From IMG/VR virus record IMGVR_UViG_3300032236_002285, positions 372,001-436,000 of that record: a DNA stretch of 64,000 nt, one strand, 5' to 3'. The notes beneath the pieces are model-generated. The model was given only the letters and a program-made list of their open reading frames with translations, was not told the DNA's origin and made no database searches. Below, one piece after another: positions 1,324 through 25,008 of this stretch. How positions within the stretch are numbered: position 1 is the stretch's first letter; every line of letters starts with the position of its first letter. The position numbers were made by a program, and so were the translations under genes.

Positions 1324-2088
1324 ATGAAATACTTAAAAAGATTTAACGAAGAACTTAAACCAAGTACATATATGTCTGCTGCTAAAAAGCTAACAGCAAT
1401 TGGTCATACAGGTAGAGCCAATGCTCTAAAAGATTGGGCGAATGAAACTGAAAAAAGAGAAGAGATGTCTAAGTGGAAGGATCGTTTACAAGACTATGGT
1501 CTTTTTGGTTCTTATAAGATGAATATTGTTAATCCAGAAACTGAAGAAAAATTTACAGGTGATTTTTACTTAGATATTAATTTTGATGAAATGGCATTTG
1601 AGGATAGCTTTGAATATGAGAAAGAAAATAATCCAGATAATATTAAAGGTGTTTCTATTTTATTTTTTATTGGTTTAATTCCAACATCTGAAGAAACACT
1701 TAGAAAATGTATGGAGATTATGCCTTGTGCAGAGTTTGGTAATGGTATGTTCTGGGGTATGAGTTGTGGTTTAGACTTACAAATTCTAAACGATAGATTA
1801 ACATTTACTAAATTCAGTTTAGATGATTATGATGATAACCTATCAGGTAATGTTTCTTTTGCTGATAGAGCTTCTGCTGGTAAATTCAAAACTTTATTAA
1901 AGAATATATTTAGTAATCCAGAATTAAACTATCCAAGTGGATATACAGATGTTGAATATATGTACCAAAAATTAGAACAAGTAGTTTGTATTAGACAATC
2001 ATTCTCATCTGATTATGGATTTGAATTAAAACAAGTGGCTGATTTTATTAATGCTCAGTCACCAAATACAATGTATAAAACTATTTAA
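1324..2088 (+). CDS. N-tagged hypothetical protein, paralog family A
   Basis: Starts MKYLKRFNEE. Shares SAAxKLxxxGH, G-x-FY, FxG, RxxAxxFK and a terminal YK with 2440 and 4675. Confidence 0.8.
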   Translation: MKYLKRFNEELKPSTYMSAAKKLTAIGHTGRANALKDWANETEKREEMSKWKDRLQDYGLFGSYKMNIVNPETEEKFTGDFYLDINFDEMAFEDSFEYEKENNPDNIKGVSILFFIGLIPTSEETLRKCMEIMPCAEFGNGMFWGMSCGLDLQILNDRLTFTKFSLDDYDDNLSGNVSFADRASAGKFKTLLKNIFSNPELNYPSGYTDVEYMYQKLEQVVCIRQSFSSDYGFELKQVADFINAQSPNTMYKTI

Positions 2089-2089
2089 T

Positions 2090-2440
2090 ATGAAACACTT
2101 AAAGAAATATGAAACCTTTAGTCCATATGATGATGAGCCACTAACAAGAGCGGAAGAAATCTTTGGAAAACAAACAAGATTAGAAAAACAATTTTCTGAA
2201 ATTATGATAGATGGTTTATCTAGCGACGATGTTGATGTTGCTCACTATTGGTCTACAATTAATGCTATTGTGGTAAATATAAAAGAAGATAAACTTCTTG
2301 ATGAAACATCAATTAAAGAATTACAACACAGAGTAGTAGAAGGTGAAAACCCAACAGAAGTTATAAATGATATTTGTTCAAGAATAAAAAAGCCTACTAG
2401 TGAAGTACAAAGACTATTAAAAAAACTAAATTCATTTTAA
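2090..2440 (+). CDS. N-tagged hypothetical protein
   Basis: Start moved to the internal Met (MKHLKKYETF) just after the upstream stop codon. Confidence 0.75.
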   Translation: MKHLKKYETFSPYDDEPLTRAEEIFGKQTRLEKQFSEIMIDGLSSDDVDVAHYWSTINAIVVNIKEDKLLDETSIKELQHRVVEGENPTEVINDICSRIKKPTSEVQRLLKKLNSF

Positions 2441-3261
2441 TGAAACATCTTAAAAGTATTAATGAATTAAAATCAAGCACTTTTAGAAATGCTGCTACTA
2501 AATTGAAGCAGTTAGGTCATATTAGAAGAAGTCAAGAAATTGAATCTCATGCTATTGATGTTGAGGAGAGAGAAGAAAAAGCAAGAATTGAACAAAGAAC
2601 TAAATGGTTAAAAGAACAAGCACCATTTAGATTACAATATTATAAAACAAAATATAACTCAGCCACTAAATCACATGAAAAGGATTTATTATGTGAAGGT
2701 AACTTTTATATAGAACCTTCTTTTGATGATGGTTGGTTCTCAGATTCAGGATATGATTATAGAGGTGAAGGTGGTAGATATAGTTTATTTATGTACTTTG
2801 AATTTGGTACTACTCCAGCTGATGTGGAAACTGCAAATACTTGGAAATCAATTGAATCTAAGTTATCAGAAGAAGCATATGATGGAATTTATTATGGTAC
2901 AAGATTAGGTATTGAAATTATACCAGAAGGTAATGCTTCAGTTGTTTCTAATGGTAAATGTTACTGGGAGTCAAGAGATAATGATATTTTTATCTTTGCT
3001 AATAGATCAGAAGCTATGAGATTTAAGAAACTTTTAATAGAAGCTCTTGAAGGTAAAATTGAATGGGGTAAAAACAAATGGAATGTGAAAGGTATTATAT
3101 CTTGTTTTGATAGATACTTTTTAAACGATGCTAATTATATACAAAGAAAAATAGATAAAGGTGAAACTCCTGAAGAACCTCTTTTTACAAAAGAAGATAT
3201 GCCTAAATTAATTAACACTCTTAAAACAGGGTTAAGTGTAAATCAATTATATAAAAACTAA
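2440..3261 (+). CDS. N-tagged hypothetical protein, paralog family A
   Basis: MKHLKSINELKSSTFRNAATKLKQLGH; TAATG start/stop coupling. Confidence 0.8.
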   Translation: MKHLKSINELKSSTFRNAATKLKQLGHIRRSQEIESHAIDVEEREEKARIEQRTKWLKEQAPFRLQYYKTKYNSATKSHEKDLLCEGNFYIEPSFDDGWFSDSGYDYRGEGGRYSLFMYFEFGTTPADVETANTWKSIESKLSEEAYDGIYYGTRLGIEIIPEGNASVVSNGKCYWESRDNDIFIFANRSEAMRFKKLLIEALEGKIEWGKNKWNVKGIISCFDRYFLNDANYIQRKIDKGETPEEPLFTKEDMPKLINTLKTGLSVNQLYKN

Positions 3262-4190
3262 TGAGATATTTAAAAACATATGAACTATTTGGATTTGGTT
3301 CTAAGAAATCAAAAACTTGGCAAGAAAAGTTCCAAGACATATACAATTGGTATTTAAAGAATAAAGATAAAAAAGATATCCGATCTATTGATTTACCACA
3401 TGCTGATGTTAAAGATGACTCTTTATCAATATCACAAGGTTTAGATAATCATTTGGTTTTCTATGGTAAAATAAAAGGTGGTAACAGACATATGGAATTA
3501 GTTGATTTCTCTGAAGCTGATTATGCTGATCCAAAATCAACAAAAGGTGTTTATCCAATCACTCAAGAAGTTTATGATGAGTATGAGAAAAAGATTCAAG
3601 AGATATCAGATTGGTTAGATGCTAGAAGTGAAAAAGAGTTTGGTAAGTCAGATAGTATTATTTCAGATGATGGTGAATTAAACTTAGATTTTGATGAAGC
3701 GGATTTAGCTTTAGAAGAAATAAATGATAAGATAAAATCTGAATTAGATATCATTGGTAAAGAATATGAATTTGAAATGTCTTACCATCTTTGGACATCT
3801 AAATCAACAAATGAATTAATAGTTGAAAGAATACAATTAGCTATTGATGACTTAAAATTTGGTTTTGGTGGTAATAGATTTTATTGTCAATTATTCACAA
3901 AAGATCCATTCGGTGAAAGAGCTGATATCTGGTTAGAGTCATATTCCTCTTCAGAGTATTATGACTTTGATGAACACAAGTGGCCTTATAGTGATGATAA
4001 AGATAAGATTATTAGAATGTCAACTATTAAAAAAGAGATGACTAGAAAAGAAGAAAGAGATTTTGAAAAGAATAGAAAATATCCTTATGCTTTTGCTTAT
4101 GATATTACACCTTGTAAATGGGAATCTATGGAGCTAGTAAAAGAGATTACTTCTCTATTACAACAAATGAATGATAGTATAAAGAAATGA
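3261..4190 (+). CDS. N-tagged hypothetical protein
   Basis: MRYLKTYELFGF; translationally coupled to neighbours. Confidence 0.8.
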   Translation: MRYLKTYELFGFGSKKSKTWQEKFQDIYNWYLKNKDKKDIRSIDLPHADVKDDSLSISQGLDNHLVFYGKIKGGNRHMELVDFSEADYADPKSTKGVYPITQEVYDEYEKKIQEISDWLDARSEKEFGKSDSIISDDGELNLDFDEADLALEEINDKIKSELDIIGKEYEFEMSYHLWTSKSTNELIVERIQLAIDDLKFGFGGNRFYCQLFTKDPFGERADIWLESYSSSEYYDFDEHKWPYSDDKDKIIRMSTIKKEMTRKEERDFEKNRKYPYAFAYDITPCKWESMELVKEITSLLQQMNDSIKK

Positions 4191-4678
4191 GATACTTAGA
4201 AAAATTCAAATCATTTGAAAATGTTTCTGTTATAAATTCATATATTCAAGATATAAATGATATTTTACTAGAATTAAGTGATTATAACTGGGTTATTCTA
4301 GTTGACTATGTTCCAAAAAGATGGGAAAATCCAAGTGCAAACTATACAATAAAATCCGACTACATCGGTGTAGTTATCAAAAAGAAGCAAAATAAATCAC
4401 AATCAAGATATCCAGAAGGATCTGAGTTCAAATTCTCTGATGTTTCTGATTATATACATAGAATAGTAGATTATTTTATGACAAATGACTATAGAATTAG
4501 GATTTGTGAATTAAATAATGCTTGGTACAATGGTATGCCAGGTCACTCAGAGAAAGGTATATGGTCTGATTGGACCGATTCAGAGATGCCTGAATTAGAT
4601 AAAAACATTTTGGGCATAGAAATTAATATATACTTACAAGGTGCTAACCTTGACGATTTTAAATATAAATTTAGATGA
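4187..4678 (+). CDS. N-tagged hypothetical protein, paralog family B
   Basis: MRYLEKFKSFE; DINDILLELSD helix resembles segments in 5454, 5864 and 6309. Confidence 0.75.
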   Translation: MRYLEKFKSFENVSVINSYIQDINDILLELSDYNWVILVDYVPKRWENPSANYTIKSDYIGVVIKKKQNKSQSRYPEGSEFKFSDVSDYIHRIVDYFMTNDYRIRICELNNAWYNGMPGHSEKGIWSDWTDSEMPELDKNILGIEINIYLQGANLDDFKYKFR

Positions 4679-5454
4679 GATACTTAAACAAATATAATGA
4701 AGAGTTGAAGTCAGATGTTTATAAATCTGCTGCTGATAAATTAACAAAATTAGGTCATATTAAAAGACCTGAAGAGTTAATGAAGTGGCATGAAATCACT
4801 AAGCAAAAAGAAATTGATGCTTCTAAATTAGCAACTCTTAAAGATTGTGAACAAATGGGTGTTTATCAACTTTCTCTTTCATATAGAAAAGGTGGTCAAG
4901 ATTTTAAGTATAAAGGTGATTTCTATATCAATCTTTCTTTTGACGGCTATAATTTAGATGAACAATACCCAGAGTGGAAAGAAGGTCAAGGTAATCTTTG
5001 GATTAGCTTTAGTTTTGGTGTTATACCTGTAGATGATGAAGGTAAAGAGTTTTGTAAGAATGTAGTAGAATCAATAATCGGATTGGGTGGTGATAAAATA
5101 ACTTATTGGTTAGGTGCTTTTTGGTTAAATATAAGTAAATCAATAGAAATAAATCCTTCTACAGGATTACCAGCAGAAGAATTGAAATTCGTACCAGAAA
5201 ATAAAAGTTACTTTGAAGAGTATGAAGGTAGTTGGCACTTAGATAATAGAGCATCTGCTATAAAATTCAAAAATACTTTATATCAAATATTTAGTGGTGA
5301 TATTATTATAAGAGAAACACCGAGTGTTCCAGGTGGAATGAAAGAGCAAATAATAGATGAACTTTGTAATAATAGAGGTCACGATATTGATGAGTTTGAA
5401 GCTATTATGAACTCTATTAAAGTTCTGAATATAAATAAATTGTATAAAGATTAA
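4675..5454 (+). CDS. N-tagged hypothetical protein, paralog family A
   Basis: MRYLNKYNEELKSDVYKSAADKLTKLGH. Confidence 0.8.
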   Translation: MRYLNKYNEELKSDVYKSAADKLTKLGHIKRPEELMKWHEITKQKEIDASKLATLKDCEQMGVYQLSLSYRKGGQDFKYKGDFYINLSFDGYNLDEQYPEWKEGQGNLWISFSFGVIPVDDEGKEFCKNVVESIIGLGGDKITYWLGAFWLNISKSIEINPSTGLPAEELKFVPENKSYFEEYEGSWHLDNRASAIKFKNTLYQIFSGDIIIRETPSVPGGMKEQIIDELCNNRGHDIDEFEAIMNSIKVLNINKLYKD

Positions 5455-5867: not shown

Positions 5868-6331
5868 GATACTTAAAAACATATGAAGGTTTGTTTGATT
5901 TCTTTAAGAAAAAGAAATCTAATAATGAATATAATGACATGATGGATAAGCAATCATATCTTAAAATTCATTTAGAAGATGTAAAAGATTGTTTTATTGA
6001 TTTATGCTCTTATAATTCTTATGATCTAAAAGCATTTATTAGTGGTGGTGAAATACAAGTTAATATTTATCCACTTAAAGATAAATTTATGAAACTTGAA
6101 GATTTGATGGAAACTTTTAGATTTACTGACTCATATATAACCGACTTAGGATTGAAAATTATTAGATACGAATTGTATATTAGTGGTAAATATGATGGTA
6201 TCAATTATATGGGAGATATCTATTATGATAAAATTTGGGAATTGGAACAAGCCCTGGATGAAGAAGGAACTAAACACATAGAAAGTTTATTAATAAGAAT
6301 TAAAAAATATGAAATACTTAAAACGATTTAA
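5864..6331 (+). CDS. N-tagged hypothetical protein, paralog family B
   Basis: MRYLKTYEGLF; EDVKDCFIDL. Confidence 0.75.
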   Translation: MRYLKTYEGLFDFFKKKKSNNEYNDMMDKQSYLKIHLEDVKDCFIDLCSYNSYDLKAFISGGEIQVNIYPLKDKFMKLEDLMETFRFTDSYITDLGLKIIRYELYISGKYDGINYMGDIYYDKIWELEQALDEEGTKHIESLLIRIKKYEILKTI

Positions 6332-6677
6332 TGAATCATCCGACTTTAATCCTGAAGAAATAATGAAAGAATTAACTCTTGAATTATTAGATGCTGGTTT
6401 ACAAGTTAATATTTATTCTGGTCAGTATAAATATTCTAATCATCCAAAATTTGAAGGTGAGTTACATGTTGAGATAACAGATAATGATAAAGTGTTTTGT
6501 AAAAACTATCCTGAAGATGATATGGATTGGTTATATGGTAAACCTATTATTATGAATTTCTTTGATGAACTAACCGATTTTGGTTTAATAAGAGACAAAG
6601 ATTATAAAGTATATGGTGGTGGACTAGGAGTTAATTTAGTCTTCCAGAAAGGTGGACTTAAAAAAGTTAAACTATAA
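6309..6677 (+). CDS. N-tagged hypothetical protein, paralog family B
   Basis: MKYLKRFNE; EIMKELTLELLD. Confidence 0.75.
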   Translation: MKYLKRFNESSDFNPEEIMKELTLELLDAGLQVNIYSGQYKYSNHPKFEGELHVEITDNDKVFCKNYPEDDMDWLYGKPIIMNFFDELTDFGLIRDKDYKVYGGGLGVNLVFQKGGLKKVKL

Positions 6678-6701
6678 CCTGAAAATCTTTCAGGTTTTTT
6701 T
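6676..6701 (+). terminator. Rho-independent terminator
   Basis: Hairpin aacctgaaa-atc-tttcaggtt followed by a T-run. Confidence 0.75.
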
Positions 6702-6727
6702 ATTATCTTTGCTGAATATATAGGTAT

Positions 6728-7897
6728 ATGAAATTAAAAAGATATAATCAATTTTTAGAATCTAAATCTGATATGTGGGACATTATTCCACAATCAGTTA
6801 AAGAGTTACATGAATTATTTCAATCAGCTGGTAAGAAACTTTACTTAGTTGGTGGTTCAGTGCGTGACTTCTTAACTGGTGATAAGCCAAAAGATTTTGA
6901 CCTAGCAACTGACGCACTTCCGGATGAAGTATTAGAAATCGTTGGTGATCAATTTAGAACTAACCTTCAAGGTAAGGCATTTGGTGTAGTTGTTGTTTAC
7001 ACTAAAGAAGTTCCAGAAGGAATGGAGATTGCTACATTCAGACAAGATGTTAGTAAAGGTCGTAACCCAGAAGTTAAACTAGGTGTTACTATTGAAGATG
7101 ATGTTAAACGTAGAGATCTAACATACAACTCTCTTTTTTATGATTTAGATACAAGACAAATCGTTGACTTAGTTGGTGGTAAAGAAGATTTACAATCTGG
7201 TGTTACTAGAATGGTTGGTGATCCAATTGAAAGATTTGATGAAGATTCATTAAGAATTTTAAGAGCATTTAGATTTGCTTCAAGATACGAACATCCTTTA
7301 CATAAAGATACTGAGAAGGCAATTGAGAAAAGAAAACAACTTCAAAACATTGACCCAGAAACTGGTGAAATGAAAAGAATTTCTCAAGAAAGAGTTTGGG
7401 AAGAAATGAAGAAAGCTTGGAAACAAGCCAAAGATTATAGATACTATTTATCATTCTTTACTAAGTTTGATATGTGGGAAGAAGTATTTCCAGGTGCTAA
7501 CATCAATACTAACTTAGTTGATAGTAAAGATTTTGTAGTTGTTATTGCTAACTTATTTAAGAACGAAAGTCCTATTGGATTGGCTGACAAGTTGGCTCAA
7601 GAATATAAGATTGAATTAGAGTTGGCGACTAAAGTAGCTTTCTTAATTTCTTTATTAAATTTCAAAGTAGAAGATGTATTTGACATCTACAAGAAAAGAC
7701 AACAATGTGCTATCACTGATGCTACTATTTTAGAGTGGTTGAAAGTGGAAGGTATTGATACTAATGAACTAATTAAGTTTGTTGAATACAGACCAAGTGT
7801 ATCGGCTCAAGAACTAATGTCTCAAGGATTCAAGGGTAAAGAACTTGGAATTGAAATCAAAAGATTAGAGGTAGAAAAATTTAAACAAATGTTATGA
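6728..7897 (+). CDS. cca: CCA-adding tRNA nucleotidyltransferase (class II, PolyA_pol family) with N-terminal tag
   Basis: Motifs LYLVGGSVRD..KDFDLAT, EIATFR, RRDLTYNSL and EDSLRILRAFRF. N-terminus MKLKRYNQFLE. Confidence 0.9.
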   Translation: MKLKRYNQFLESKSDMWDIIPQSVKELHELFQSAGKKLYLVGGSVRDFLTGDKPKDFDLATDALPDEVLEIVGDQFRTNLQGKAFGVVVVYTKEVPEGMEIATFRQDVSKGRNPEVKLGVTIEDDVKRRDLTYNSLFYDLDTRQIVDLVGGKEDLQSGVTRMVGDPIERFDEDSLRILRAFRFASRYEHPLHKDTEKAIEKRKQLQNIDPETGEMKRISQERVWEEMKKAWKQAKDYRYYLSFFTKFDMWEEVFPGANINTNLVDSKDFVVVIANLFKNESPIGLADKLAQEYKIELELATKVAFLISLLNFKVEDVFDIYKKRQQCAITDATILEWLKVEGIDTNELIKFVEYRPSVSAQELMSQGFKGKELGIEIKRLEVEKFKQML

Positions 7898-8298
7898 AAA
7901 AATTCACAGAAAGTATTGAATCTATAAAAAAAGTACCATCAGAAACTTTAAAGTATTTTGACCTATTTCCTCTATTAAAAGGTTTAGAGTCAGAGAGACC
8001 TGGTATTAAAGAAAGAGTTTGGGAATGGATGTGTGATGAATGGGATGCTGCCTTTAAGCCATATAATGGTAGAATTTCAAGTATTAATTTATTTTTCTAT
8101 GGTATTGGTGATGAATATCCGAATGATTATTTGAATCAATATCCTGATGAACTTGAACATTGTAAAAAGATACACCCTGAAGCTTTTGTAGAAGGTTCAA
8201 AGGAAAAAGAACTAAGATTAGATTTGAATCTAATCTGGTCAGTATATGAAGAAGAGATTGAAGATCCAGAATCTTTTAGTGTAAAGGTTTTTTGGTAA
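7894..8298 (+). CDS. Hypothetical protein with a weak N-tag (MKKFTE)
   Basis: ATGA overlap with cca. Confidence 0.7.
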   Translation: MKKFTESIESIKKVPSETLKYFDLFPLLKGLESERPGIKERVWEWMCDEWDAAFKPYNGRISSINLFFYGIGDEYPNDYLNQYPDELEHCKKIHPEAFVEGSKEKELRLDLNLIWSVYEEEIEDPESFSVKVFW

Positions 8299-8315
8299 AA
8301 AAAAATTATAAATTA

Positions 8316-9289
8316 ATGAGACATTTAAAAACATTCAAACTATTTGAAGAAGCGGTTCCGAAACCGTTAAAAAAGTTTCCTACAGAACCGGCTGTTCATT
8401 GGAATTATCTAATGAAAGTTCTAGAAGATGCTGGTATTAACCCACATGATGGTTTAGTGAAAGGACAGAGAGATACTTATTTTCAGGACTTTTTGCTAAA
8501 TGTGCTAGTAGAGATAATGTTGTTTTCCCTAATATGTTAGACATTGAAGGTTGGTCTAAAGAAGGTCAAAGTGATGCTAGATATAAGAATTTTATCTTTG
8601 GTGAATCTGTGTTTCTTTTACCAATAAGCTACGATGGTTCTAATGATGCGGTAGAAGCAGTTCAAAAGAAAAAGAGCTTTCTTGATAATATGAGAGATTT
8701 CGCCAGACAAATGGGTAAATCTAAAGCAGAGGAAGATAAGTTTGTTCAAGATGCTGAGAAACATACACATTTTGGACCAAGTGGATACGACTGGGCTAAC
8801 CCAGCACTTAAAGTTATTCATGATAAATTAGGACAATATTACAGGAATGATAAATTAAGAGTTTGGTTCCCTAAAGATAGAGATTATGATCCTTGGGAAG
8901 GTATGGACTATCCACATAAATATAATGTAGTTGGTGATTTAGATAGACCAAATGGTGTTTATTTCCTTTCTGATATTGAGAAGTTTATTGATGATAAATA
9001 TGGTATTAAAGATGAACTATTCTATAAGTTTATTATTGATAATCAATATATTGAAGGTCGTTATTGGGAAAGAGTTTGGTCTCTTTCAACTGAAGATGAA
9101 AATGGGAAAGATACTGGAAATAAACTTCAGAAATCCAACTTTGGTCAATATGGAATGGAACCAACTGAAAACATTCTTGATATGTTGAATATCATAGAGC
9201 ATGAGTTTGGTGATGAAATTCAATCAACTGATTATGAAGGATTCCCAATCTATGTAGATTATTACAAAAAAGTAGAACCAAAATATTAA
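8316..9289 (+). pseudogene. N-tagged gene split by a 1-nt frameshift in the T5 run at 8490-8494 (assembly error, pseudogene or slippage)
   Basis: The MRHLKTFKLFEE frame stops at 8540, while the downstream frame is open from 8450. One extra T gives a continuous ...YFQDFFAKCASRDNVVFPNMLDIEG... Confidence 0.6.
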
Positions 9290-9290
9290 T

Positions 9291-9755
9291 ATGACTTATT
9301 ACTTAACATACTTAAAAGACACAATTGGCAACAATTATGTAGGAATTAATATTCCTGAAGCTATTGTTGAACCACATTTAGAAAAACTAAAAGAGATTTT
9401 AGGTGAAGAAGATTTTCAAATCTTTACACAAAATCAAAAGATGAGAGACCACGGTCACTATCATATCACCGTTATTAATGTAATGGATTGTAACCGCCTT
9501 TCAAAAGAAATGGGTATGGCTAACTTTGTTAAGTCAGTTGAACTTGCTTTTGAGTACCCAGTAGAAGATTTAGAAATGTTAGGTGTTGGTAAAGCTTCTA
9601 AGAACGATAATACGGCTTACTTTATAGTTTGTTCATCTGATAGTTTAGATGCTGTTAGAACTCGTTTTAACCTACCTAAACAAGACTTCCACGTTACTTT
9701 GGGATTCAATGCTAAGGATGTATTTGGTGTTCCAAAAAATGAGGTAATATTTTAA
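9291..9755 (+). CDS. 2H phosphoesterase family protein
   Basis: Two HxT motifs (YHITV, FHVTLG) about 75 aa apart. Confidence 0.8.
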   Translation: MTYYLTYLKDTIGNNYVGINIPEAIVEPHLEKLKEILGEEDFQIFTQNQKMRDHGHYHITVINVMDCNRLSKEMGMANFVKSVELAFEYPVEDLEMLGVGKASKNDNTAYFIVCSSDSLDAVRTRFNLPKQDFHVTLGFNAKDVFGVPKNEVIF

Positions 9756-9806
9756 AACTTTTCTTCTTTTAAAGAATAAGAAAAAATAAAAATAATAAAT
9801 TAAAAT

Positions 9807-10085
9807 ATGGAATTGTATAACTATTATAGCCTTGATGAATGTCCAGAAAGAAAGGTTATTAAAAAAAGACTAACACAACTTCAAGATGAAGGTAGAATTG
9901 AATTTGAAATAGATGGTGATGTTCTTAAATTAACTGATTTGGATTTAGATGAAAATGAAGTTGCTGAATTAATTGAAATGTTTGATAAATATGATGCTTT
10001 TCCTTATCCAGATTATGAAGAAGGATTGGATGATGAAGAAGAGGATGACGACTACTACGATAATTACGATGAAGATGATTATTAA
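9807..10085 (+). CDS. Small, highly acidic protein
   Basis: D/E/Y-rich C-terminal tail. Confidence 0.7.
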   Translation: MELYNYYSLDECPERKVIKKRLTQLQDEGRIEFEIDGDVLKLTDLDLDENEVAELIEMFDKYDAFPYPDYEEGLDDEEEDDDYYDNYDEDDY

Positions 10086-10097
10086 TACTTAATAAAA

Positions 10098-10682
10098 ATG
10101 ATTAAAATAGGAATTACGGGAGAAATGGGAAGCGGGAAAACCTTCTGTTCTAAGATATTTGAACAATTGGGAGTTCCTGTTTTTTATTCTGATGATATTT
10201 CAAAGTCTATAGTAAATACAAACAAAGCTTTGAAGCAAGAACTAACTCAAGAGTTTGGTAATATTTATGATGAAAATTCAATGATAGTTCCAAAACTACT
10301 AAGAGATATTGTATTTGTTAAAGGTGGTGAGCAAAAGCTAAAAATGTTGAATAAAATAATTCATCCTTATGTATTTAATGAATTTGAATTGTTCTGTAAT
10401 AAAAACTCTAGCAGTCCTTATATTATTGCTGAAACCGCACTTCTTTATGAAAGTAACATGAGAAGATATGTTGATAAAGTTATTTATGTTTGTGTAGAAG
10501 AGCAAACAAGAATCCAAAGAACATTCAAAAGAAGTGGTTATTCTGAACAAGAATATAAAGAAAGAATGAAATATCAGATTAATCCAGAAACAAAGAAAAA
10601 ACTATCAAATTTCATTATTTATAATAATGATGGTGATGATGTTAATAAACAAATTTTAGAAATACATAATACTTTAAAATAA
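10098..10682 (+). CDS. coaE: Dephospho-CoA kinase
   Basis: IGITGEMGSGKT Walker A; LNKIIHPYV, ETALLYE, IIYNN. Confidence 0.9.
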   Translation: MIKIGITGEMGSGKTFCSKIFEQLGVPVFYSDDISKSIVNTNKALKQELTQEFGNIYDENSMIVPKLLRDIVFVKGGEQKLKMLNKIIHPYVFNEFELFCNKNSSSPYIIAETALLYESNMRRYVDKVIYVCVEEQTRIQRTFKRSGYSEQEYKERMKYQINPETKKKLSNFIIYNNDGDDVNKQILEIHNTLK

Positions 10683-10714
10683 AAAAGACCAATCATTGAT
10701 TGGTCTTTTTTTTT
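10681..10714. terminator. Bidirectional terminator between convergent coaE and pit
   Basis: aaaaaagaccaatca-t-tgattggtctttttt. Confidence 0.85.
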
Positions 10715-10724
10715 ATTTTTAATA

Positions 10725-11786
10725 CTATCCAAATATATATCTAAATAGTAGGAATAATCCACCAGACATTACAATAGTGACAGGTAATGTTAATAACCAA
10801 GCAGATAATATAGTTTTGATTGTGTTTGTTTTTAAGTTAGTAACACCTTTGGAAGCCACCATTGAGCCAGCAATACCTGAACTTAAAATATGAGTTGTTG
10901 AAACTGGTAATTTAAACCAAGTAGATAAACCAATTGTTATAGCACCAACCAATTCAGCGGAAGCTCCTTGAGCATATGTTAGATGTGTTTTACCAATTTT
11001 CTCACCAATTGTAACAACAATTCTTTTCCAACCAATCATTGTTCCAAGACCAAGTGAAGCAGCAACCATCCACATAACCCAAGTTGGTGGGTGTGAAATC
11101 GTATCTAATGTATAAGCCGCAGGTAAGAAAGCCATTAGAATAATCATCACCAAGCCTATTCCTTTTTGTCCATCATTTCTACCGTGAAAGAATGATACTA
11201 AAGATGATGTTGTGAATAAAGTGGCTCTAATCCAAAACGGAGGTGGATTAACACCATCCGGTTCTTCAAATACATCTTTTCTTTTAACTACTTTTCTCAA
11301 GAACCACATTAGGAAGATAACTAAGCTGAAACCTAAAAGTGGTGATAAAACTAATGCTTTACCTATATCAATTGCTTTACCCCAATTAACTACATCAATA
11401 CCAGAATATAATGAGTAACCAACACCAACACCAAGTATTGAACCTATAAGAGTGTGAGATGATGAGGCGGGAATACCTTTATACCATGTGATTAGATTCC
11501 AGAAGATAGCAGTTGTGAGTAGAGCTGTAACCATCTGAATAACATGAGATGTGTTAGCATCTGTTAAAATTTCCTTTGGTATAAGACCAACGATTGCCAT
11601 TGTAACACCAACGCCACCAGTTATCAGACCTAGAAAGTTCATAAGACCTGACCAAACAACGGCTGTTGTTGGTTTAAGAGATTTTGTATAAATTACCGTT
11701 GCTACGGCATTTGCTGTGTCGTGAAATCCATTAACGAATTCATAAGCACAGGCTAATAATAGAAATAATACTAATAAGAATGTCAT
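10725..11786 (-). CDS. pit: Inorganic phosphate transporter, PiT family
   Basis: NGFHDTANAVAT, GIPASSSHTLIG, HGRNDGQK, LPVSTTH; many transmembrane segments. Confidence 0.92.
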   Translation of the reverse strand: MTFLLVLFLLLACAYEFVNGFHDTANAVATVIYTKSLKPTTAVVWSGLMNFLGLITGGVGVTMAIVGLIPKEILTDANTSHVIQMVTALLTTAIFWNLITWYKGIPASSSHTLIGSILGVGVGYSLYSGIDVVNWGKAIDIGKALVLSPLLGFSLVIFLMWFLRKVVKRKDVFEEPDGVNPPPFWIRATLFTTSSLVSFFHGRNDGQKGIGLVMIILMAFLPAAYTLDTISHPPTWVMWMVAASLGLGTMIGWKRIVVTIGEKIGKTHLTYAQGASAELVGAITIGLSTWFKLPVSTTHILSSGIAGSMVASKGVTNLKTNTIKTILSAWLLTLPVTIVMSGGLFLLFRYIFG

Positions 11787-11798
11787 AATTTATTGTTT

Positions 11799-12638
11799 TT
11801 ATTTTTTAGTGAAAATTTTATTAAAGTTTTCAAATATAATGTATGCTTGTAAGATATTATTTTTTTCTAAATAATCAATAGTACCATATCTATTAGCATA
11901 TTGTAGACCATAACCTAACTCGAATCTCATAGGAACAGACATTTTTGGTTTATAACCTAATAAACAGAATGTTCTATTTTGGTCCCAAATTTTATTATCA
12001 GCTACATTCTTACCAACTGAGATAAACATCTCATTCCAAGTAGTTATATAAAATGTATTATCTTCTAACTTTTTATGATTTAGAGGAACAATTGCTCTTA
12101 CAAAATATCTAATTCTTCCTTTTTGAGCACTTGGTAAGTAATCATCACCTAATGAATATCCTAAACCCGTAGATGTATTATCAACCTTGTTACCCATAAA
12201 TCTATATTCAAATCTATACCTTTGATCAATAATAACTCTACCGATCTTATTACTTAATGTTACTTGAGGACATATTCTAAACTCTGGTTGGATCTTTGGC
12301 TTTCCACCACCTTCTAAAGAAGATGTATAAGTTTCCCAGAATCCAATAGGAGAAAGAGAAAATCTAACATTATCATTTAATTGATAATGAACCCATGGTC
12401 TATAAACATGTTGATATGGGTTCTCAAATATGTTTTTTGAAGTAGATAGATTACTTGGATCAGAACATCTGCGATATTGATAATCTAATTGCCACTTCCA
12501 TTTGTTTTTGATACTACCATTGATAACCGTCTCTGTCCAAAAAGAGTAACGATTAAATGATTGTCTTGTACTTTGTGCGTTTGATGCTATTGAAATTAAC
12601 AATAAAGCAACAACTAATAGTTTTTTCATTTTTTTCAT
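11799..12638 (-). CDS. DUF2490-like outer-membrane beta-barrel protein
   Basis: Signal peptide MKKLLVVALLLISIASNAQ; DYQYRR, RYRFEYRF, NEMFI, WDQNR and ELGY strand motifs. Confidence 0.75.
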   Translation of the reverse strand: MKKMKKLLVVALLLISIASNAQSTRQSFNRYSFWTETVINGSIKNKWKWQLDYQYRRCSDPSNLSTSKNIFENPYQHVYRPWVHYQLNDNVRFSLSPIGFWETYTSSLEGGGKPKIQPEFRICPQVTLSNKIGRVIIDQRYRFEYRFMGNKVDNTSTGLGYSLGDDYLPSAQKGRIRYFVRAIVPLNHKKLEDNTFYITTWNEMFISVGKNVADNKIWDQNRTFCLLGYKPKMSVPMRFELGYGLQYANRYGTIDYLEKNNILQAYIIFENFNKIFTKK

Positions 12639-15167: not shown

Positions 15168-16301
15168 ATGGCTGAAATGACTAAATCTACAATGCCTCAA
15201 TCAATGGTTGAGAATCTTTCAAAGTTAACTGCGAAAGAACGTAAATACTTTGCCGTGATGTGGGCTAAGTATGGTGTATTAAACATTACATCTAAACCCG
15301 GTGTTGCGAAGTCTGCTATTGGTAAATCAATTGCCGATAAAATGAACTTCCGTTATATGGACTTACGTTTATCAATGGTTGACGAAACTGACGTAGGTTT
15401 GTACCCAGCTGTTAACGAAATTGAAGTTGATGGTAAAATGGTAAAATGTTTGGACTTCGTTGTTCCTCGTTGGGCAATTGAAGCTAACAAACAACCAACC
15501 ATCATTCACTTTGAAGAGTTGAACCGTGCTTCTCAGCAAGTTCGTAATGCCGCTCTTCAAATCTTACTTGAGCGTCAAATTGGTGTTGATTTCAAATTCA
15601 ACGATAATGTTTTGATGATGTCTTCTGGTAACTTAGGTGACGAAGACGGAACAGACGTTGAAGAATTTGACTCTGCTTTGAATAACCGTTTGGTTCACAT
15701 CAACCACACCTTGAGTGTAGAAGAATGGTTAGGTGACTTTGCTGTTGCTAATTGTCACAAGTTAATCACTTCTTTCATTAAAGCTCACCCAGAGCAAATG
15801 TATAAGTCAAGTGAGAACACTAAAGCTTACGCTACTCCACGTTCTTGGACTATGATGTCTAAGTTCATCACTGAAAACTTTGGTCAAGATGCTTCACCTC
15901 GTGATTTCTTACCTTTGTTGAAAGAAGTAGCAAGTGGTTACCTTGGTAACTCTGCTGTGAAGTTTGTTCAATACTGCGAAGATATGTTGAATATCTCTAT
16001 CAACGATGTAATCAACAACTACGATGGTATCAAGAAAGACCTTGAGAAATACAACCGTGATAAGAACTCTGAATTGATTCAATCATTGAAAGAGATTGAC
16101 ATCACCAAGTTGAATAAGAAACAACTTGACAACGTTGTAAAATTCTTGAACAACGTGGGTGACGATGAAAAGACAGCTTACTTGCTTTACATCTTAGATA
16201 ACATCGCAGATGTAACAAACCCAACCTTGAAAGCTTTCTTGCTTCAGTTCGAAGACCTTCTTCGCACTATCAAGAAAATCAACAAGCCTGGTAGTAAGTA
16301 A
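15168..16301 (+). CDS. MoxR/dynein-like AAA+ ATPase
   Basis: Variant Walker A SKPGVAKS; DLRLS; Walker B IIHFEELNRA; SGN; ALNNRL; TPRSW. Confidence 0.85.
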   Translation: MAEMTKSTMPQSMVENLSKLTAKERKYFAVMWAKYGVLNITSKPGVAKSAIGKSIADKMNFRYMDLRLSMVDETDVGLYPAVNEIEVDGKMVKCLDFVVPRWAIEANKQPTIIHFEELNRASQQVRNAALQILLERQIGVDFKFNDNVLMMSSGNLGDEDGTDVEEFDSALNNRLVHINHTLSVEEWLGDFAVANCHKLITSFIKAHPEQMYKSSENTKAYATPRSWTMMSKFITENFGQDASPRDFLPLLKEVASGYLGNSAVKFVQYCEDMLNISINDVINNYDGIKKDLEKYNRDKNSELIQSLKEIDITKLNKKQLDNVVKFLNNVGDDEKTAYLLYILDNIADVTNPTLKAFLLQFEDLLRTIKKINKPGSK

Positions 16302-23425: not shown

Positions 23426-23770
23426 ATGAAACTTGATATCAATGAAATTTACCACAATTATATTGTGAGAGTTGTAGTATTTGCTCTCTTTACTTTTAAG
23501 AGACAGATAAGACAACCTAATATTTATAAGATGTCTGTTATAGCTTTTACTATTAAAAGATTGCCTTGGAAAATTAATTTAGTAATTGATACAGGATTAA
23601 AACTAGATAAAGAAGATGAAAGAGAAATACTACTTAATGAAATATTAGAAGGTATTGAAACAGATTATTTATCAACCGTTACCGTTACATTTATCACACC
23701 ACTAAAAGAAGTTACTATGAGTGTGGATTTAAGTGATGAAGAAAAATACGAACACTATCTTTATTCTTAA
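23426..23770 (+). CDS. Hypothetical protein with an internal C-tag-like helix
   Basis: TAATATATA at 23411-23419; internal EREILLNEIL. Confidence 0.65.
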   Translation: MKLDINEIYHNYIVRVVVFALFTFKRQIRQPNIYKMSVIAFTIKRLPWKINLVIDTGLKLDKEDEREILLNEILEGIETDYLSTVTVTFITPLKEVTMSVDLSDEEKYEHYLYS

Positions 23771-25008
23771 TACTCAAAATTAACTTCAGCTCTTCTGTAG
23801 TTTAAGTCAAATGAACTAAATCCAAAGATATCACAGATTCTTTGAAATTTATCCTCACAACTTTCTTCAGATGGTAGTTGACCATCATAAGCATAAGAGC
23901 TAAATTCTATTTTAGTTTCTGAGTCGCCTATTTTTAGACTATCTACTCTGAATCCTAATTTTTCAATTTCATATTTTAAATCAACTTCGTCGGGTAATTC
24001 AAAGTTATCATGTTGAATACTTGGTCTACTGAATTCAAAAAATATATTAAATACTTTATTAACTTCAAAACCAGATAAAGTCCAACCATCATCTCCTAAT
24101 CTACCTACTGCAGATTGCATATTTTCTAATATAACCATTAAGTTATTATAAGTGGCATCTTTAGGTGAATAAACAATACTGAACTTACTAACGGTTTTAT
24201 TTTTAGATACAAGAACTGGTTTGAAATTTTGATATCTTATATTTTTTTCAAGATAATCTGAGTATGTCATATTACCGGTAGAAGACTTGAAGGTAATCTT
24301 TTCACCTTCATCAATAAAGTCCAACATAGTATCAACTATCTTATCAACTTCATTGTGTGTATCAGTTGATTCTTTGATAAAAGAAACATATTTATCAACC
24401 TTTCTTTTCTTTAATTTACCATTATCAAACTTATAGTATTTATACTTACCATCTTTATTAAGAACCACATAAAAAGAATCGGGTTTAATATATTTTAGAT
24501 AAGACTTTGTTGTTTGTAATTGAGTTGAGTAAACATAATCAATATAATCTTCATCTGCTTTATGACCACCCATCTCACCTCTTGTTAGGTTTTGCTTTTT
24601 AGCTGTTGACAAATCAATTAAAATAAGAATAAAAATAACATTATAACCATACTTGTGAGCATCCTTAGTAATCTCAAAAATGTTTTTATCATTTGATCCG
24701 GTTGTATCGTAGATAAAGTTTTGACCGGTTCTTAAATATGATTTTAGATGTGTAATATTTAATTCTGATGCGCCTTGATGATATTTAGATTTATCTTTAC
24801 TAAGTATATATGAAACATCATCGGTTGAAAACTTTCTAATATTAGAATTATAAGGCAAGATATTGTTATTAGCAAATGTAGATTTACCAGAGCCTGGAAT
24901 GCCAAGTAAAACTATACCTAGCTTTTCCTTTTGTCTAATATCGGGTATAGGATCATTCTTTGACCACTCTTCATTTATAAACCCTTCAAAATTGTTAATA
25001 ACTCTCAT
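23767..25008 (-). CDS. N-tagged P-loop kinase (zeta-toxin/AAA_33-like) fused to a second module
   Basis: GIPGSGKST, FIYDTTGS; an internal tag-like KYVSFIKES precedes the C-terminal module. Confidence 0.75.
   Translation of the reverse strand: MRVINNFEGFINEEWSKNDPIPDIRQKEKLGIVLLGIPGSGKSTFANNNILPYNSNIRKFSTDDVSYILSKDKSKYHQGASELNITHLKSYLRTGQNFIYDTTGSNDKNIFEITKDAHKYGYNVIFILILIDLSTAKKQNLTRGEMGGHKADEDYIDYVYSTQLQTTKSYLKYIKPDSFYVVLNKDGKYKYYKFDNGKLKKRKVDKYVSFIKESTDTHNEVDKIVDTMLDFIDEGEKITFKSSTGNMTYSDYLEKNIRYQNFKPVLVSKNKTVSKFSIVYSPKDATYNNLMVILENMQSAVGRLGDDGWTLSGFEVNKVFNIFFEFSRPSIQHDNFELPDEVDLKYEIEKLGFRVDSLKIGDSETKIEFSSYAYDGQLPSEESCEDKFQRICDIFGFSSFDLNYRRAEVNFEY

What the first reader, a model, noticed from the sequence alone, without database searches (positions are those of the whole stretch)
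6728..9755. Tagged CCA-adding enzyme with a 2H phosphoesterase in the same operon: possible virion-delivered tRNA 3'-end repair module
Seen: the CCA enzyme has the N-tag (MKLKRYNQFLE), both a host-type -7 box (6704-6711) and an AATATATA box (6715-6722) upstream, and a 2H phosphoesterase lies three genes downstream. Known: several bacterial toxins and anti-phage effectors attack tRNAs, including their 3' ends. 2H enzymes open 2',3'-cyclic phosphates, and T4 Acb1 is a 2H enzyme that degrades CBASS cyclic nucleotides. Inference: a counter-defence module that heals and re-tails tRNAs from the first minutes of infection; alternatively the 2H protein is an anti-CBASS enzyme.
Basis: partly seen in the sequence, partly recalled or inferred. 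Interest (0 to 1): 0.78.

Follow-up and report, generated by a model that had tools for sequence, protein, structure and literature searches.

The report
Megaphage tRNA tail repair gene pair
A giant freshwater phage carries an enzyme that rebuilds the CCA tail of tRNAs together with an enzyme that most likely unblocks damaged RNA ends; the pairing is conserved in its relatives, and it is a plausible but untested counter to bacterial defences that cut tRNA tails.

Summary
All features lie at the stated coordinates. The window comes from a 476-kb freshwater megaphage related to the 634-642 kb uncultured phages LR745206 and LR756502.

Gene 6728-7897 is a class II tRNA nucleotidyltransferase. Its catalytic motifs are invariant, and the full-length model best matches solved CCA-adding enzymes. 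Gene 9291-9755 is a stand-alone 2H-SAK phosphoesterase with both HxT motifs.

One terminator-to-terminator unit holds CCA, three ORFans, 2H, an acidic 92-aa protein and CoaE. In relatives CCA and 2H are mostly adjacent and overlap by 4 nt in close ones, so the three genes between them here are an insertion.

Elsewhere 2H-SAK domains are fused to RNA 5'-kinase, phosphatase and RNA ligase. This favours RNA 2',3'-cyclic-phosphate healing over an Acb1-like anti-CBASS role.

At least 49 of the phage's 53 tRNA genes lack an encoded CCA, so routine tRNA maturation is a strong ordinary role for the CCA enzyme.

The N-tag is real, portable (three orthologues lack it) and selected at the protein level. 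It resembles the T4 capsid-targeting sequence in a phage with a T4-type head, but virion delivery is untested. The AATATATA box is a genuine phage promoter class shared with head genes. The "-7 box" is near chance level.

Verdict: a new variant of known phage RNA repair, of moderate interest.

The parts
6676..6696 (+). Intrinsic terminator-like hairpin plus T-tract that ends the upstream gene (6309-6677) and marks the 5' boundary of the unit
   Evidence: 9-bp stem, T-run; sequence
6704..6711 (+). TATCTTTG, a match to the Bacteroidota -7 consensus TAnnTTTG; not distinguishable from chance
   Evidence: 859 genome copies; 69 of 592 genes have one within 80 nt upstream against about 43 expected
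6715..6722 (+). AATATATA phage promoter box, starting 13 nt before the ATG, which implies a very short or absent leader
   Evidence: 123 of 181 copies lie within 45 nt upstream of starts; same box before the Rnl1-like ligase, HD and portal genes; it is the only copy inside 6700-10700
6728..6775 (+). N-terminal tag (MKLKRYNQFLE, residues 1-11) plus linker (to residue 16) of the CCA enzyme. It is an addition to the enzyme core, which starts at M16-W-D-I-I-P
   Evidence: tag conserved in most orthologues; L038, L048 and L049 start at the core; the Bacillus CCA enzyme aligns from query residue 32 = chain residue 16; residues 1-13 pLDDT below 50
6728..7897 (+). Class II tRNA nucleotidyltransferase, most likely CCA-adding, 389 aa
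   Evidence: GG..DxD, RRD..N and EDxxRxxR invariant; TM 0.69/0.72 to CCA-adding enzyme 6qy6
7894..8298 (+). ORFan, 134 aa, overlaps the CCA stop by 4 nt; part of the lineage-specific insertion
   Evidence: no family; no homologue in 57 related loci
8292..8540 (+). Small ORF (82 aa from TTG, or 74 aa from ATG at 8316, which gives the tag MRHLKTFKLFEE); part of the insertion
8534..9289 (+). ORFan, 251 aa; part of the insertion
9291..9755 (+). Stand-alone 2H-SAK phosphoesterase, 154 aa, untagged; predicted RNA 2',3'-cyclic phosphodiesterase
   Evidence: pLDDT 97; the best structural matches are 2H enzymes, LigT/CPDase-like on top
9807..10085 (+). Acidic 92-aa protein with a D/E/Y-rich tail; follows 2H in most relatives; function unknown
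   Evidence: present in about 30 loci; cluster whose members are all viral
10098..10682 (+). Dephospho-CoA kinase (CoaE) homologue; last gene of the unit; conserved at this place in close relatives
   Evidence: (TIGR00152, 112.6 bits against cut-off 65.6)
10681..10711 (+). Strong hairpin terminator shared with the convergent PHO4 gene; 3' boundary of the unit
   Evidence: 14-bp stem

Best explanation
The stretch 6728-10682 is one phage transcription unit in a 476-kb freshwater megaphage, probably of Bacteroidota. Its conserved core is an ancestral gene pair: a class II CCA-adding tRNA nucleotidyltransferase followed by a stand-alone 2H-SAK RNA 2',3'-cyclic phosphodiesterase. After these come a small acidic protein and CoaE.

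Proposed mechanism:
1. The CCA enzyme adds or rebuilds the 3' CCA tail. It acts first on the phage's own roughly 53 tRNAs, nearly all of which lack an encoded CCA, and also on host tRNAs whose tails were trimmed or cut.
2. The 2H enzyme opens the 2',3'-cyclic phosphate ends left by metal-independent RNases.
3. A phosphatase removes the remaining phosphate, giving a 3'-OH that the CCA enzyme can extend or an RNA ligase can seal. The candidate is the phage's HAD_SAK_2 protein at G000:366621-367076.

Shown: the enzyme families, intact active-site motifs, the operon structure, conserved adjacency in relatives, the RNA-repair fusion partners of 2H-SAK, and the CCA-less phage tRNAs.

Inferred: the substrates, the coupling of the two activities, and any role against host defence.

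The N-terminal tag of the CCA enzyme is a portable peptide that may target it to the capsid. This part is a hypothesis only.
For: CCA identity:
- PF01743 at E 3e-30 and phrog_2244 at E 4e-59.
- Best sequence match to a solved structure is the CCA-adding enzyme 6ibp, at E 1.4e-31.
- Motifs A, B and D are invariant in 21 orthologues.
- The full-length model matches CCA-adding enzymes at TM 0.69-0.72, E. coli poly(A) polymerase at 0.57-0.62, and A-adding or CC-adding enzymes at 0.50-0.54.

2H identity:
- PF22547 at 77 bits, with a conserved HxT pair.
- The model has pLDDT 97. The best-ranked structural matches are 2H enzymes, with LigT, CPDase and CNPase types on top at Z 7-7.8. The Trl1 CPD domain and B. 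subtilis RNA cyclic phosphodiesterase give TM 0.47-0.48.

Link between the two genes:
- CCA lies upstream of 2H on the same strand in 28 of 37 distinct related loci (duplicate contigs removed), within 46 nt in 13 of them. CCA identity in these loci ranges from 41 to 90%.
- In three further loci from close relatives the two genes overlap by 4 nt.

Family context of 2H-SAK:
- It is fused to AAA_33 kinase, HAD_PNKP phosphatase and DSP-PTP phosphatase.
- In 838-846 aa proteins it is also fused to an RNA ligase.

Need for CCA addition: 49 of 53 phage tRNA genes lack CCA.

Rest of a repair kit in the same genome:
- An Rnl1-like ligase and two other RNA ligases, plus an HD protein.
- AAA_33 kinases.
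- An intact HAD_SAK_2 phosphatase. A HAD_SAK_2 remnant lies just after CoaE in close relatives.

One promoter box and no internal terminator.
Against: - All loci showing the pairing belong to one phage clade, so the synteny could be inherited rather than selected. In more distant 2H-SAK loci no CCA gene lies within 8 kb.
- In this genome three unrelated genes separate the pair, so adjacency is not required.
- No phosphatase lies in the unit. By established knowledge of ThpR and Trl1-CPD, 2H CPDases leave a 2'- or 3'-phosphate that would still block or hinder CCA addition.
- The complex prediction for CCA plus 2H gave no answer.
- The CCA protein does not reach NCBIfam equivalog cut-offs (151 bits against 290), and its PcnB and CCA scores are similar.
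- No ribozyme or other internal source of cyclic-phosphate tRNA ends was found near the tRNA clusters.
- Some 2H-SAK domains are fused to Cap15 cyclic-dinucleotide receptors.
Confidence: 0.55

Rival explanations
1. Housekeeping only. The CCA enzyme exists simply to mature the phage's own large set of CCA-less tRNAs. The 2H gene next to it has no functional tie to tRNA 3' ends. It would serve the classical heal-and-seal pathway with the phage's RNA ligases and kinases at anticodon-loop breaks, and sits there by descent.
For: - 49 of 53 phage tRNA genes lack CCA.
- 507 phage records encode homologues of this enzyme, many of them large-genome phages (Caulobacter, Brevundimonas).
- Outside this clade 2H-SAK is linked to kinase, phosphatase and ligase, not to CCA.
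- The genome has four ligase-like genes and two kinases elsewhere.
- Three genes have been inserted between CCA and 2H here without apparent harm.
Against: - The pair is kept adjacent, often overlapping, over 41-90% CCA identity, while the flanking and intervening genes turn over.
- The ligases and kinases lie 50 kb or more away from the 2H gene.
Confidence: 0.25
2. Anti-signalling enzyme. The 2H protein degrades host immune cyclic oligonucleotides (CBASS, type III CRISPR, or 2'-5'-linked signals) as T4 Acb1 and the poxvirus cGAMP phosphodiesterases do. It would be unrelated to the CCA enzyme.
For: - Acb1 (7t26/7t27) and the penguinpox cGAMP PDE appear among the structural matches.
- Two bacterial proteins fuse a Cap15 cyclic-dinucleotide receptor to a 2H-SAK domain.
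Against: - Acb1 scores lower (Z 6.3-6.5) than the LigT, CPDase and CNPase types (Z 7-7.8).
- There is no sequence match to any solved structure.
- The dominant fusion partners of 2H-SAK are RNA end-healing and sealing domains.
- Linkage to a tRNA enzyme is conserved.
Confidence: 0.12
3. The nucleotidyltransferase is not a CCA-adding enzyme. It would be a poly(A) polymerase or a partial (CC- or A-adding) enzyme that marks RNAs for decay or remodels host RNA.
For: - The top NCBIfam hit by score is the PcnB subfamily (155.6 bits), marginally above the CCA equivalog (151.5). Both are below their cut-offs.
- E. coli PAP structures are among the sequence and fold matches.
Against: - Full-length fold matches are better to CCA-adding enzymes (TM 0.69-0.72) than to PAP (0.57-0.62) or to A- and CC-adding enzymes (0.50-0.54).
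- The loop between motifs A and B, and the C-terminal body and tail, are present.
- By established knowledge, PAP I is confined to beta- and gamma-proteobacteria.
- The phage has a clear need for CCA addition.
Confidence: 0.06

Closest known systems
E. coli multifunctional CCA addition/repair protein (Cca: class II nucleotidyltransferase fused to an HD domain with 2',3'-cyclic phosphodiesterase, 2'-nucleotidase and phosphatase activities; Yakunin et al. 2004, cited from own knowledge; NCBIfam NF008137)
   Same: It combines a CCA-adding nucleotidyltransferase with an enzyme that opens 2',3'-cyclic phosphates, which is the logic proposed here for healing and then re-tailing tRNA 3' ends.
   Different: Here the two activities are separate genes, and the phosphodiesterase is a 2H enzyme, not an HD domain. 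The phage CCA protein has no HD domain. The phosphatase step would need a third protein.
'Swiss Army Knife' (SAK) RNA repair proteins, the source of Pfam 2H-SAK, PTP-SAK and HAD_SAK_2
   Same: The 2H domain belongs to the same Pfam family (77 bits). The genome also encodes a HAD_SAK_2 phosphatase, P-loop kinases and RNA ligases.
   Different: SAK proteins join 2H, phosphatase, kinase and ligase in one chain. Here the 2H domain stands alone, and its conserved neighbour is a CCA-adding enzyme, a partner not seen in the other 2H-SAK loci examined.
Phage T4 tRNA repair (Pnkp + Rnl1 against the PrrC anticodon nuclease) and the RNA repair sets of jumbo phages (PMC7824862)
   Same: These are phage-encoded healing and sealing enzymes that restore cleaved tRNAs. 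Jumbo phages are already known to carry CCA-adding enzymes, 2H phosphoesterases and many tRNAs.
   Different: T4 repairs anticodon-loop breaks by ligation. The pair here would act on the 3' acceptor end, with no ligation needed. A conserved CCA-2H operon is not mentioned in the passages of that survey that I retrieved by term search.
T4 capsid-targeting sequence (CTS, MKTYQEFIAE) of internal proteins IPI-III and Alt (PMC8442874, PMC9026906)
   Same: Both are short N-terminal peptides beginning MK, with aromatic residues at i and i+3 (T4 Y4/F7; here Y6/F9). These are the positions that matter for T4 targeting. They are followed by I/L and then Glu (T4 I8..E10; here L10-E11). The tag is portable across unrelated enzymes, and the genome has a T4-type portal, prohead protease and gp23-like capsid protein.
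   Different: Neither cleavage nor packaging has been shown. The spacing of Glu differs by one residue. There are two tag flavours on roughly 50-75 genes, far more than in T4. The 2H partner is untagged.
T4 Acb1 anti-CBASS 2H nuclease
   Same: It has a 2H fold with two HxT/S motifs, is small and phage-encoded, and aligns structurally at Z 6.3-6.5.
   Different: It is not the best structural match, there is no sequence-level relationship, and the family context points to RNA ends.
CCA-adding enzymes of phages such as the Caulobacter, Brevundimonas and Mycobacterium phages listed
   Same: They belong to the same enzyme family (about 26-31% identity). Many of the listed phages have large genomes.
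   Different: Those annotated genes are not reported with a 2H partner in the hits seen. The 2H protein here has phage relatives only in three uncultured megaphage records. The N-terminal tag is specific to this clade.

Membership tests
Class II CCA-adding tRNA nucleotidyltransferase | PolyA_pol head domain with motif A (GGxVRD ... DxD carboxylates) | tested here: met
   PF01743 at E 3e-30. G42, G43, R46, D47, D56 and D58 are invariant in 21 orthologues.
Class II CCA-adding tRNA nucleotidyltransferase | Motif B (RRDxxxN) and the nucleotide-selecting motif D (EDxxRxxR) | tested here: met
   R128, R129, D130, N134 and E172, D173, R176, R179 are invariant. They align to the same motifs of 6ibp.
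Class II CCA-adding tRNA nucleotidyltransferase | Head-neck-body-tail architecture that holds the tRNA acceptor/T arm | tested here: met
   The model has pLDDT 90. Full-length TM is 0.69/0.72 to 6qy6 and 0.69 to the T. maritima enzyme bound to tRNA (5hc9). This is better than to PAP or to A-/CC-adding enzymes.
Class II CCA-adding tRNA nucleotidyltransferase | Reaches a curated equivalog score for CCA tRNA nucleotidyltransferase | tested here: not met
   NF009814 scores 151.5 bits against a cut-off of 290. The PcnB subfamily scores 155.6 against 305.65. The protein is a divergent member; subfamily assignment rests on fold and context.
Class II CCA-adding tRNA nucleotidyltransferase | Adds exactly C-C-A to tRNA and stops | not testable with these tools
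   Needs an enzyme assay.
2H phosphoesterase superfamily, 2H-SAK family (PF22547) | Two H-x-T/S motifs | tested here: met
   H58-I-T60 and H134-V-T136. H58 is invariant and the others are at least 90% conserved in 66 sequences.
2H phosphoesterase superfamily, 2H-SAK family (PF22547) | Profile score above the Pfam gathering threshold | tested here: met
   77 bits against 27; the only hit in the genome.
2H phosphoesterase superfamily, 2H-SAK family (PF22547) | 2H fold (two lobes with pseudo-twofold symmetry) | tested here: inconclusive
   The best-ranked matches are 2H enzymes, but the scores are middling (Z 7-7.8, TM below 0.5).
2H phosphoesterase superfamily, 2H-SAK family (PF22547) | Hydrolysis of RNA 2',3'-cyclic phosphate ends | not testable with these tools
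   Inferred from fusions with kinase, phosphatase and ligase.
Swiss Army Knife multidomain RNA repair protein | 2H, phosphatase, kinase (and ligase) joined in one polypeptide | tested here: not met
   The window protein is 154 aa and consists of the 2H domain only. HAD_SAK_2, kinases and ligases are separate genes elsewhere.
Acb1-type anti-CBASS nuclease | Sequence or close structural membership in the Acb1 family | tested here: not met
   There is no sequence match to any PDB chain at E up to 10. Acb1 scores Z 6.3-6.5, below the RNA CPDase-type enzymes.
Acb1-type anti-CBASS nuclease | Cleaves cyclic di-/trinucleotide signals | not testable with these tools
   Needs an assay. Cap15-receptor fusions of 2H-SAK keep the question open.
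T4-type capsid-targeting sequence (CTS) | Peptide of about 10 aa at the extreme N-terminus with the targeting aromatics and an I/L..E processing site | tested here: inconclusive
   Y6/F9, L10 and E11 compare with T4 Y4/F7, I8 and E10. The spacing to Glu differs by one residue.
T4-type capsid-targeting sequence (CTS) | T4-type prohead protease and capsid present in the genome | tested here: met
   Head maturation protease phrog_207 at E 1e-31, with a weak PF03420 hit; gp23-like capsid protein PF07068 at 91.8 bits; portal phrog_213.
T4-type capsid-targeting sequence (CTS) | Protein found in virions with the tag cleaved off | not testable with these tools
   There is no isolate and no proteome. 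Only DNA metagenome runs hold the sequence.
Bacteroidota sigma-A promoter (-33 TTTG / -7 TAnnTTTG) | -7 box with a -33 partner, enriched at this position | tested here: not met
   The 8-mer is present, but no -33 TTTG is visible in the sequence. The motif is only about 1.6-fold enriched upstream of genes.

The most novel reading that the evidence does not exclude
The N-terminal tag is a capsid-targeting sequence of a T4-type head. Under this reading the megaphage packs a ready-made RNA repair kit into its giant capsid and injects it with the DNA. The kit would hold the tagged CCA-adding enzyme, the tagged Rnl1-like ligase, a tagged P-loop kinase and a tagged NUDIX hydrolase. tRNA tails and loops cut by host immunity could then be rebuilt before any phage gene is expressed. 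One example of such immunity is the tRNA-tail-cleaving Cas12a3, first described in Bacteroidetes among others, for which no viral counter-measure is known (PMC12851939). The untagged 2H and HAD_SAK_2 enzymes would join after expression.
Probability: 0.2. Interest if true: 0.8.

Novelty: new variant of a known kind. Interest (0 to 1): 0.5.

Why it matters
Bacteria are increasingly found to stop phages by destroying tRNAs. A 2026 study showed that Cas12a3 nucleases cut the universal CCA tail and stated that viral counter-measures are unknown (PMC12851939).

A conserved, often translationally coupled pair of a CCA-adding enzyme and an RNA cyclic-phosphate-opening enzyme in a widespread clade of freshwater megaphages is a concrete, cloneable candidate for such a counter-measure. 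It would repair without ligation, which differs from the T4 paradigm.

The pair also gives the uncharacterised 2H-SAK family a simple stand-alone member to assay.

The portable N-terminal tag sits on several nucleic-acid enzymes in a phage with a T4-type head. It offers a testable route to learning what giant phages carry inside their capsids.

If instead the pair only serves maturation of the phage's own CCA-less tRNAs, the finding is ordinary.

Tried and rejected
- **Ribozyme-made cyclic ends.** I asked whether self-cleaving ribozymes after phage tRNAs (as with HDV-like theta ribozymes) create the 2',3'-cyclic ends that 2H would open. An Rfam scan of all four tRNA cluster regions at E up to 0.1 found tRNAs and only weak, sub-threshold chance-level hits to other families, none of them a ribozyme. 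The window holds only three tRNAs. Rejected for lack of evidence.
- **Physical complex of CCA and 2H.** The prediction gave 'no answer', which counts neither for nor against.
- **Host flank or provirus.** CoaE, PHO4 and DUF2490 look cellular. However, CoaE is conserved at this place in related phages, and tagged genes with phage promoters lie on both sides. I read them as phage-borne.
- **Tag as a nucleotide-level translation signal.** Rejected, because synonymous codon usage in the tag equals the genome's.
- **Transcription timing from public RNA data.** Only DNA metagenome runs hold the sequence, so no reads were laid.
- **Functions for the three inserted ORFs and the acidic protein.** Pfam, NCBIfam, PHROGs and the Atlas gave nothing.
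- **Bacterial genome scan for 2H-SAK neighbours.** A few look-ups of single proteins gave a Cap15-fusion locus and an uninformative housekeeping locus.
- **Burroughs and Aravind 2016**, the source of the SAK name, could not be read.

Full report
**What the window is.** The window is bases 372001-436000 of a 476,236-bp IMG/VR virus record. Its nearest GenBank relatives are uncultured phages of 634 and 642 kb, LR745206 and LR756502. Their CCA proteins are 79% and 51% identical to the window's, and their 2H proteins 62% and 59%. The sequence recurs in freshwater, lake, river and drinking-water metagenomes. The genome has a T4-type head module: portal, head maturation protease and a gp23-like major capsid protein. 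It also has 53 tRNA genes by ARAGORN. A relative encodes a protein with a T9SS-type sorting motif (my reading of the ORF). Close relatives carry a TonB-dependent receptor and a Por_Secre_tail protein next to the unit. Both point to a Bacteroidota host, though this is an inference. The record is labelled 'provirus'. However, the phage's own promoter box and N-terminal tag occur throughout the record, on both sides of the cellular-looking genes. I therefore treat CoaE, PHO4 and DUF2490 as phage-borne.

**Checking the observation.** Every feature is at the stated place.
- ORF 6728-7897 begins MKLKRYNQFLE and is a PolyA_pol-head nucleotidyltransferase.
- ORF 9291-9755 is a 2H-SAK phosphoesterase with both HxT motifs.
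- Three ORFs lie between them, chained by 4- and 7-nt overlaps and a 1-nt gap.
- Terminator-like hairpins on the + strand occur only at 6676-6696 and 10681-10711. The only AATATATA box between them is the one at 6715.

The unit is therefore CCA, three ORFans, 2H, an acidic 92-aa protein and CoaE.

**The two upstream boxes.** The AATATATA box is a true regulatory element. Of 181 copies, 123 lie within 45 nt upstream of a start codon in the right orientation, where 2.4% of positions qualify. They fall into two sharp classes. One is TTAATATATA-N4-ATG (56 genes, including the CCA gene, the Rnl1-like ligase and an HD protein). The other lies about 30 nt upstream with an A-rich leader (61 genes, including the portal). 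The head protease and capsid genes carry the near-identical TTATATATA. The class thus looks late-like, comparable to the T4 late promoter TATAAATA (own knowledge), and not early. The TAnnTTTG match at 6704 is at most weakly above chance and lies in the terminator's T-tract.

**The nucleotidyltransferase.** Motifs A (GG..R-D, DxD), B (RRD..N) and D (EDxxRxxR) are invariant across 21 orthologues. The best sequence match to a solved structure is a CCA-adding enzyme (6ibp, E 1.4e-31). A confident model (pLDDT 90) superposes over its whole length best on CCA-adding enzymes, at TM 0.69-0.72. Poly(A) polymerase reaches 0.57-0.62, and A-adding or CC-adding enzymes 0.50-0.54. Curated equivalog cut-offs are not reached, and the PcnB and CCA profiles score alike. 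The subfamily call therefore rests on fold and context. The context is strong: 49 of the phage's 53 tRNA genes do not encode CCA, so CCA addition is needed for the phage's own tRNAs.

**The tag.**
- Residues 1-13 are the only low-confidence part of the model.
- The Bacillus enzyme aligns from query residue 32 at its own residue 16. The first roughly 16 residues therefore have no cellular counterpart.
- Most orthologues keep M-x-I-K-[KR]-Y-x-x-F-L-E-S followed by a linker of variable length.
- Three orthologues (L038, L048, L049) start exactly at the core (MW[ND]IIP or MKTVIP). The tag is thus a separable module.
- A loose pattern marks 77 of 592 genes, 13% of N-termini against 2.75% at internal Met. 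Stricter patterns mark 33-54 genes.
- Bearers have unrelated folds: the CCA enzyme, an Rnl1-like ligase (MKLFRYKEFLRES), an AAA_33/Zeta-type kinase at window 23767-25008 (-), and a NUDIX protein.
- Codon usage inside the tag equals the genome's, so the peptide itself is under selection.
- Tagged genes are enriched for the AATATATA promoter (16 of 33 against 107 of 559; odds ratio 4.0, P 2e-4).
- The T4 capsid-targeting sequence is MKTYQEFIAE (PMC8442874). Residues 4 and 7 matter for targeting and residues 8 and 10 for processing (PMC9026906). The tag has the same Y-x-x-F spacing, followed by L and then E.

Together with the T4-type head, this makes capsid targeting a reasonable hypothesis. Nothing here tests it, and the 2H protein is untagged.

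**The 2H protein.** The model is very confident (pLDDT 97). The best-ranked structural matches are 2H enzymes. By VIA-align the top ones are LigT/ThpR-type RNA cyclic phosphodiesterases and CNPase (Z 7-7.8), with Acb1 at 6.3-6.5. By Foldseek the best coverage is to the CPD domain of fungal tRNA ligase and to B. subtilis RNA 2',3'-cyclic phosphodiesterase (TM 0.47-0.48). These scores are middling and cannot fix a substrate.

The family context is more telling. Among 758 representatives and 54 viral loci, 2H-SAK domains are fused to:
- an AAA_33 polynucleotide-kinase-type domain;
- HAD_PNKP or DSP-PTP phosphatases;
- in proteins of 838-846 aa, all of these plus an RNA ligase.

That is a complete heal-and-seal enzyme. 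Two bacterial proteins instead fuse a Cap15 cyclic-dinucleotide receptor to 2H-SAK, so a role on cyclic nucleotides cannot be excluded for the family.

**The link between the two genes.** After removing identical duplicate contigs, the phage clade whose 2H is at least 41% identical gives 37 distinct loci. These are 35 distinct IMG/VR loci plus LR745206 and LR756502. A CCA gene lies upstream of 2H on the same strand in 28 of them, and within 46 nt in 13. The others have one to four unrelated ORFs in between. In three further loci from close relatives (2H 92% identical) the genes overlap by 4 nt. They are followed by the acidic protein, CoaE and a 69-aa remnant of a HAD_SAK_2 phosphatase. None of the window's three intervening ORFs has a homologue in any of the 57 related loci compared, and the close relatives have no gene between CCA and 2H. 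They are therefore an insertion into an ancestral, probably translationally coupled pair. More distant 2H-SAK loci have no CCA gene within 8 kb. The pairing is thus a trait of this clade. It may be selected or merely inherited, and I could not run the control that would tell the two apart.

**How it most likely works.** The CCA enzyme finishes the phage's own tRNAs and can rebuild trimmed tails on any tRNA. The 2H enzyme opens the 2',3'-cyclic phosphates left by metal-independent RNases. A phosphatase is still needed, because 2H CPDases leave a phosphomonoester (established for ThpR and Trl1-CPD; PMC4201822 abstract). The genome has an intact HAD_SAK_2 gene (FLDNDGV motif) at G000:366621-367076, about 5 kb before the window, as well as an HD protein. 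The healed 3'-OH end can then be re-tailed by the CCA enzyme or, at internal breaks, sealed by the phage ligases. No RtcB, Tpt1 or HAD_PNKP was found. The closest known logic is the E. coli Cca protein, where the nucleotidyltransferase is fused to an HD domain with cyclic phosphodiesterase and phosphatase activities.

**Bearing on defence.** Cas12a3 nucleases, one of them from a Bacteroidetes bacterium, cut tRNA CCA tails as anti-phage immunity. The authors state that viral counter-measures are unknown (PMC12851939). A phage CCA-adding enzyme is an obvious candidate. RuvC cuts should leave a 3'-OH (own knowledge), so 2H would not be needed for that particular nuclease. The solved post-cleavage complex holds a cleaved ACCA fragment, so the cut can also remove the discriminator base, which a CCA enzyme cannot restore on its own.

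**Verdict.** The repair-module idea is plausible and gains support from conserved adjacency and from the family context of 2H-SAK. The early-promoter argument fails. Virion delivery is an attractive but untested extension. The ordinary role, maturation of CCA-less phage tRNAs, must be counted as at least part of the explanation. This is a new variant of known phage RNA repair, of moderate interest.

Noticed in passing
G000:C1:219792-272289 (outside the window; loci L072-L074): Many phage tRNAs with Lys, Glu, Gln, Asn, Ile, Thr and Met anticodons are 83-88 nt long and fold with a long variable arm. That class II shape is normally restricted to Leu, Ser, Tyr and Sec. If seryl- or leucyl-tRNA synthetase charges them, they could miscode. 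Their identity elements were not examined.
   Followed up: partly
genome-wide; in the window e.g. 6715-6722, and before the genes starting at 22235(-), 23426(+) and 25008(-): TTAATATATA followed by 4 nt and then ATG occurs before 56 genes. This implies leaderless or nearly leaderless mRNAs. A second class of 61 genes has the box about 30 nt upstream with an A-rich leader.
   Followed up: partly
window 23767-25008 (-); G000:326882-328225 (+); G000:278693-279298 (+): Besides the CCA enzyme, the N-terminal tag sits on an AAA_33/Zeta-type P-loop kinase, an Rnl1-like RNA ligase and a NUDIX hydrolase. All of these are nucleic-acid or nucleotide enzymes.
   Followed up: partly
window 10725-12638 (-): A PHO4-family phosphate transporter and a DUF2490 protein lie inside the phage genome, directly after the unit. 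Close relatives carry a TonB-dependent receptor and a T9SS-tail protein at the same place. This looks like a hot spot for host-derived cargo.
   Followed up: no
window 1324-5454 (+), and 4675-5454 in particular: A run of paralogous tagged proteins of about 250-310 aa (MKYLKRFNEELKP..YMSAAKKL..) precedes the CCA unit. Homologues are found upstream of CCA in many relatives. No family match was found.
   Followed up: no
window 9807-10085 (+): An acidic 92-aa protein with a D/E/Y-rich tail follows 2H in about 30 related loci and belongs to a cluster whose members are all viral. It may be a nucleic-acid mimic or a partner of the pair; its function is unknown.
   Followed up: partly
L003:8162-8902, L004:7565-8299 and most related loci: In most relatives the 2H protein is about 245 aa, with a roughly 90-aa C-terminal extension that has no family match. 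The window's protein and a few others lack it.
   Followed up: no
G000:C1:366621-367076 (+), about 5 kb before the window: An intact HAD_SAK_2 phosphatase (82 bits; DxD motif FLDNDGV). A 69-aa remnant of the same family lies just after CoaE in close relatives.
   Followed up: partly
G000:C1:446188-447150 (-), outside the window: A second, very divergent PolyA_pol-like ORF of 320 aa (PF01743 at E 0.0016, below the cut-off).
   Followed up: no
L072:3576-3706 and 15176-15277 (G000 about 221.1 kb and 232.7 kb): Weak partial tmRNA-like matches (31 and 21.5 bits; gathering score 47) lie inside the tRNA clusters.
   Followed up: no
whole record: IMG/VR classes the record as a 'provirus'. The phage promoter box and the tag occur throughout the record, and the nearest relatives are free 600-kb phage genomes. 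The label may be due to the cellular-looking cargo genes.
   Followed up: no
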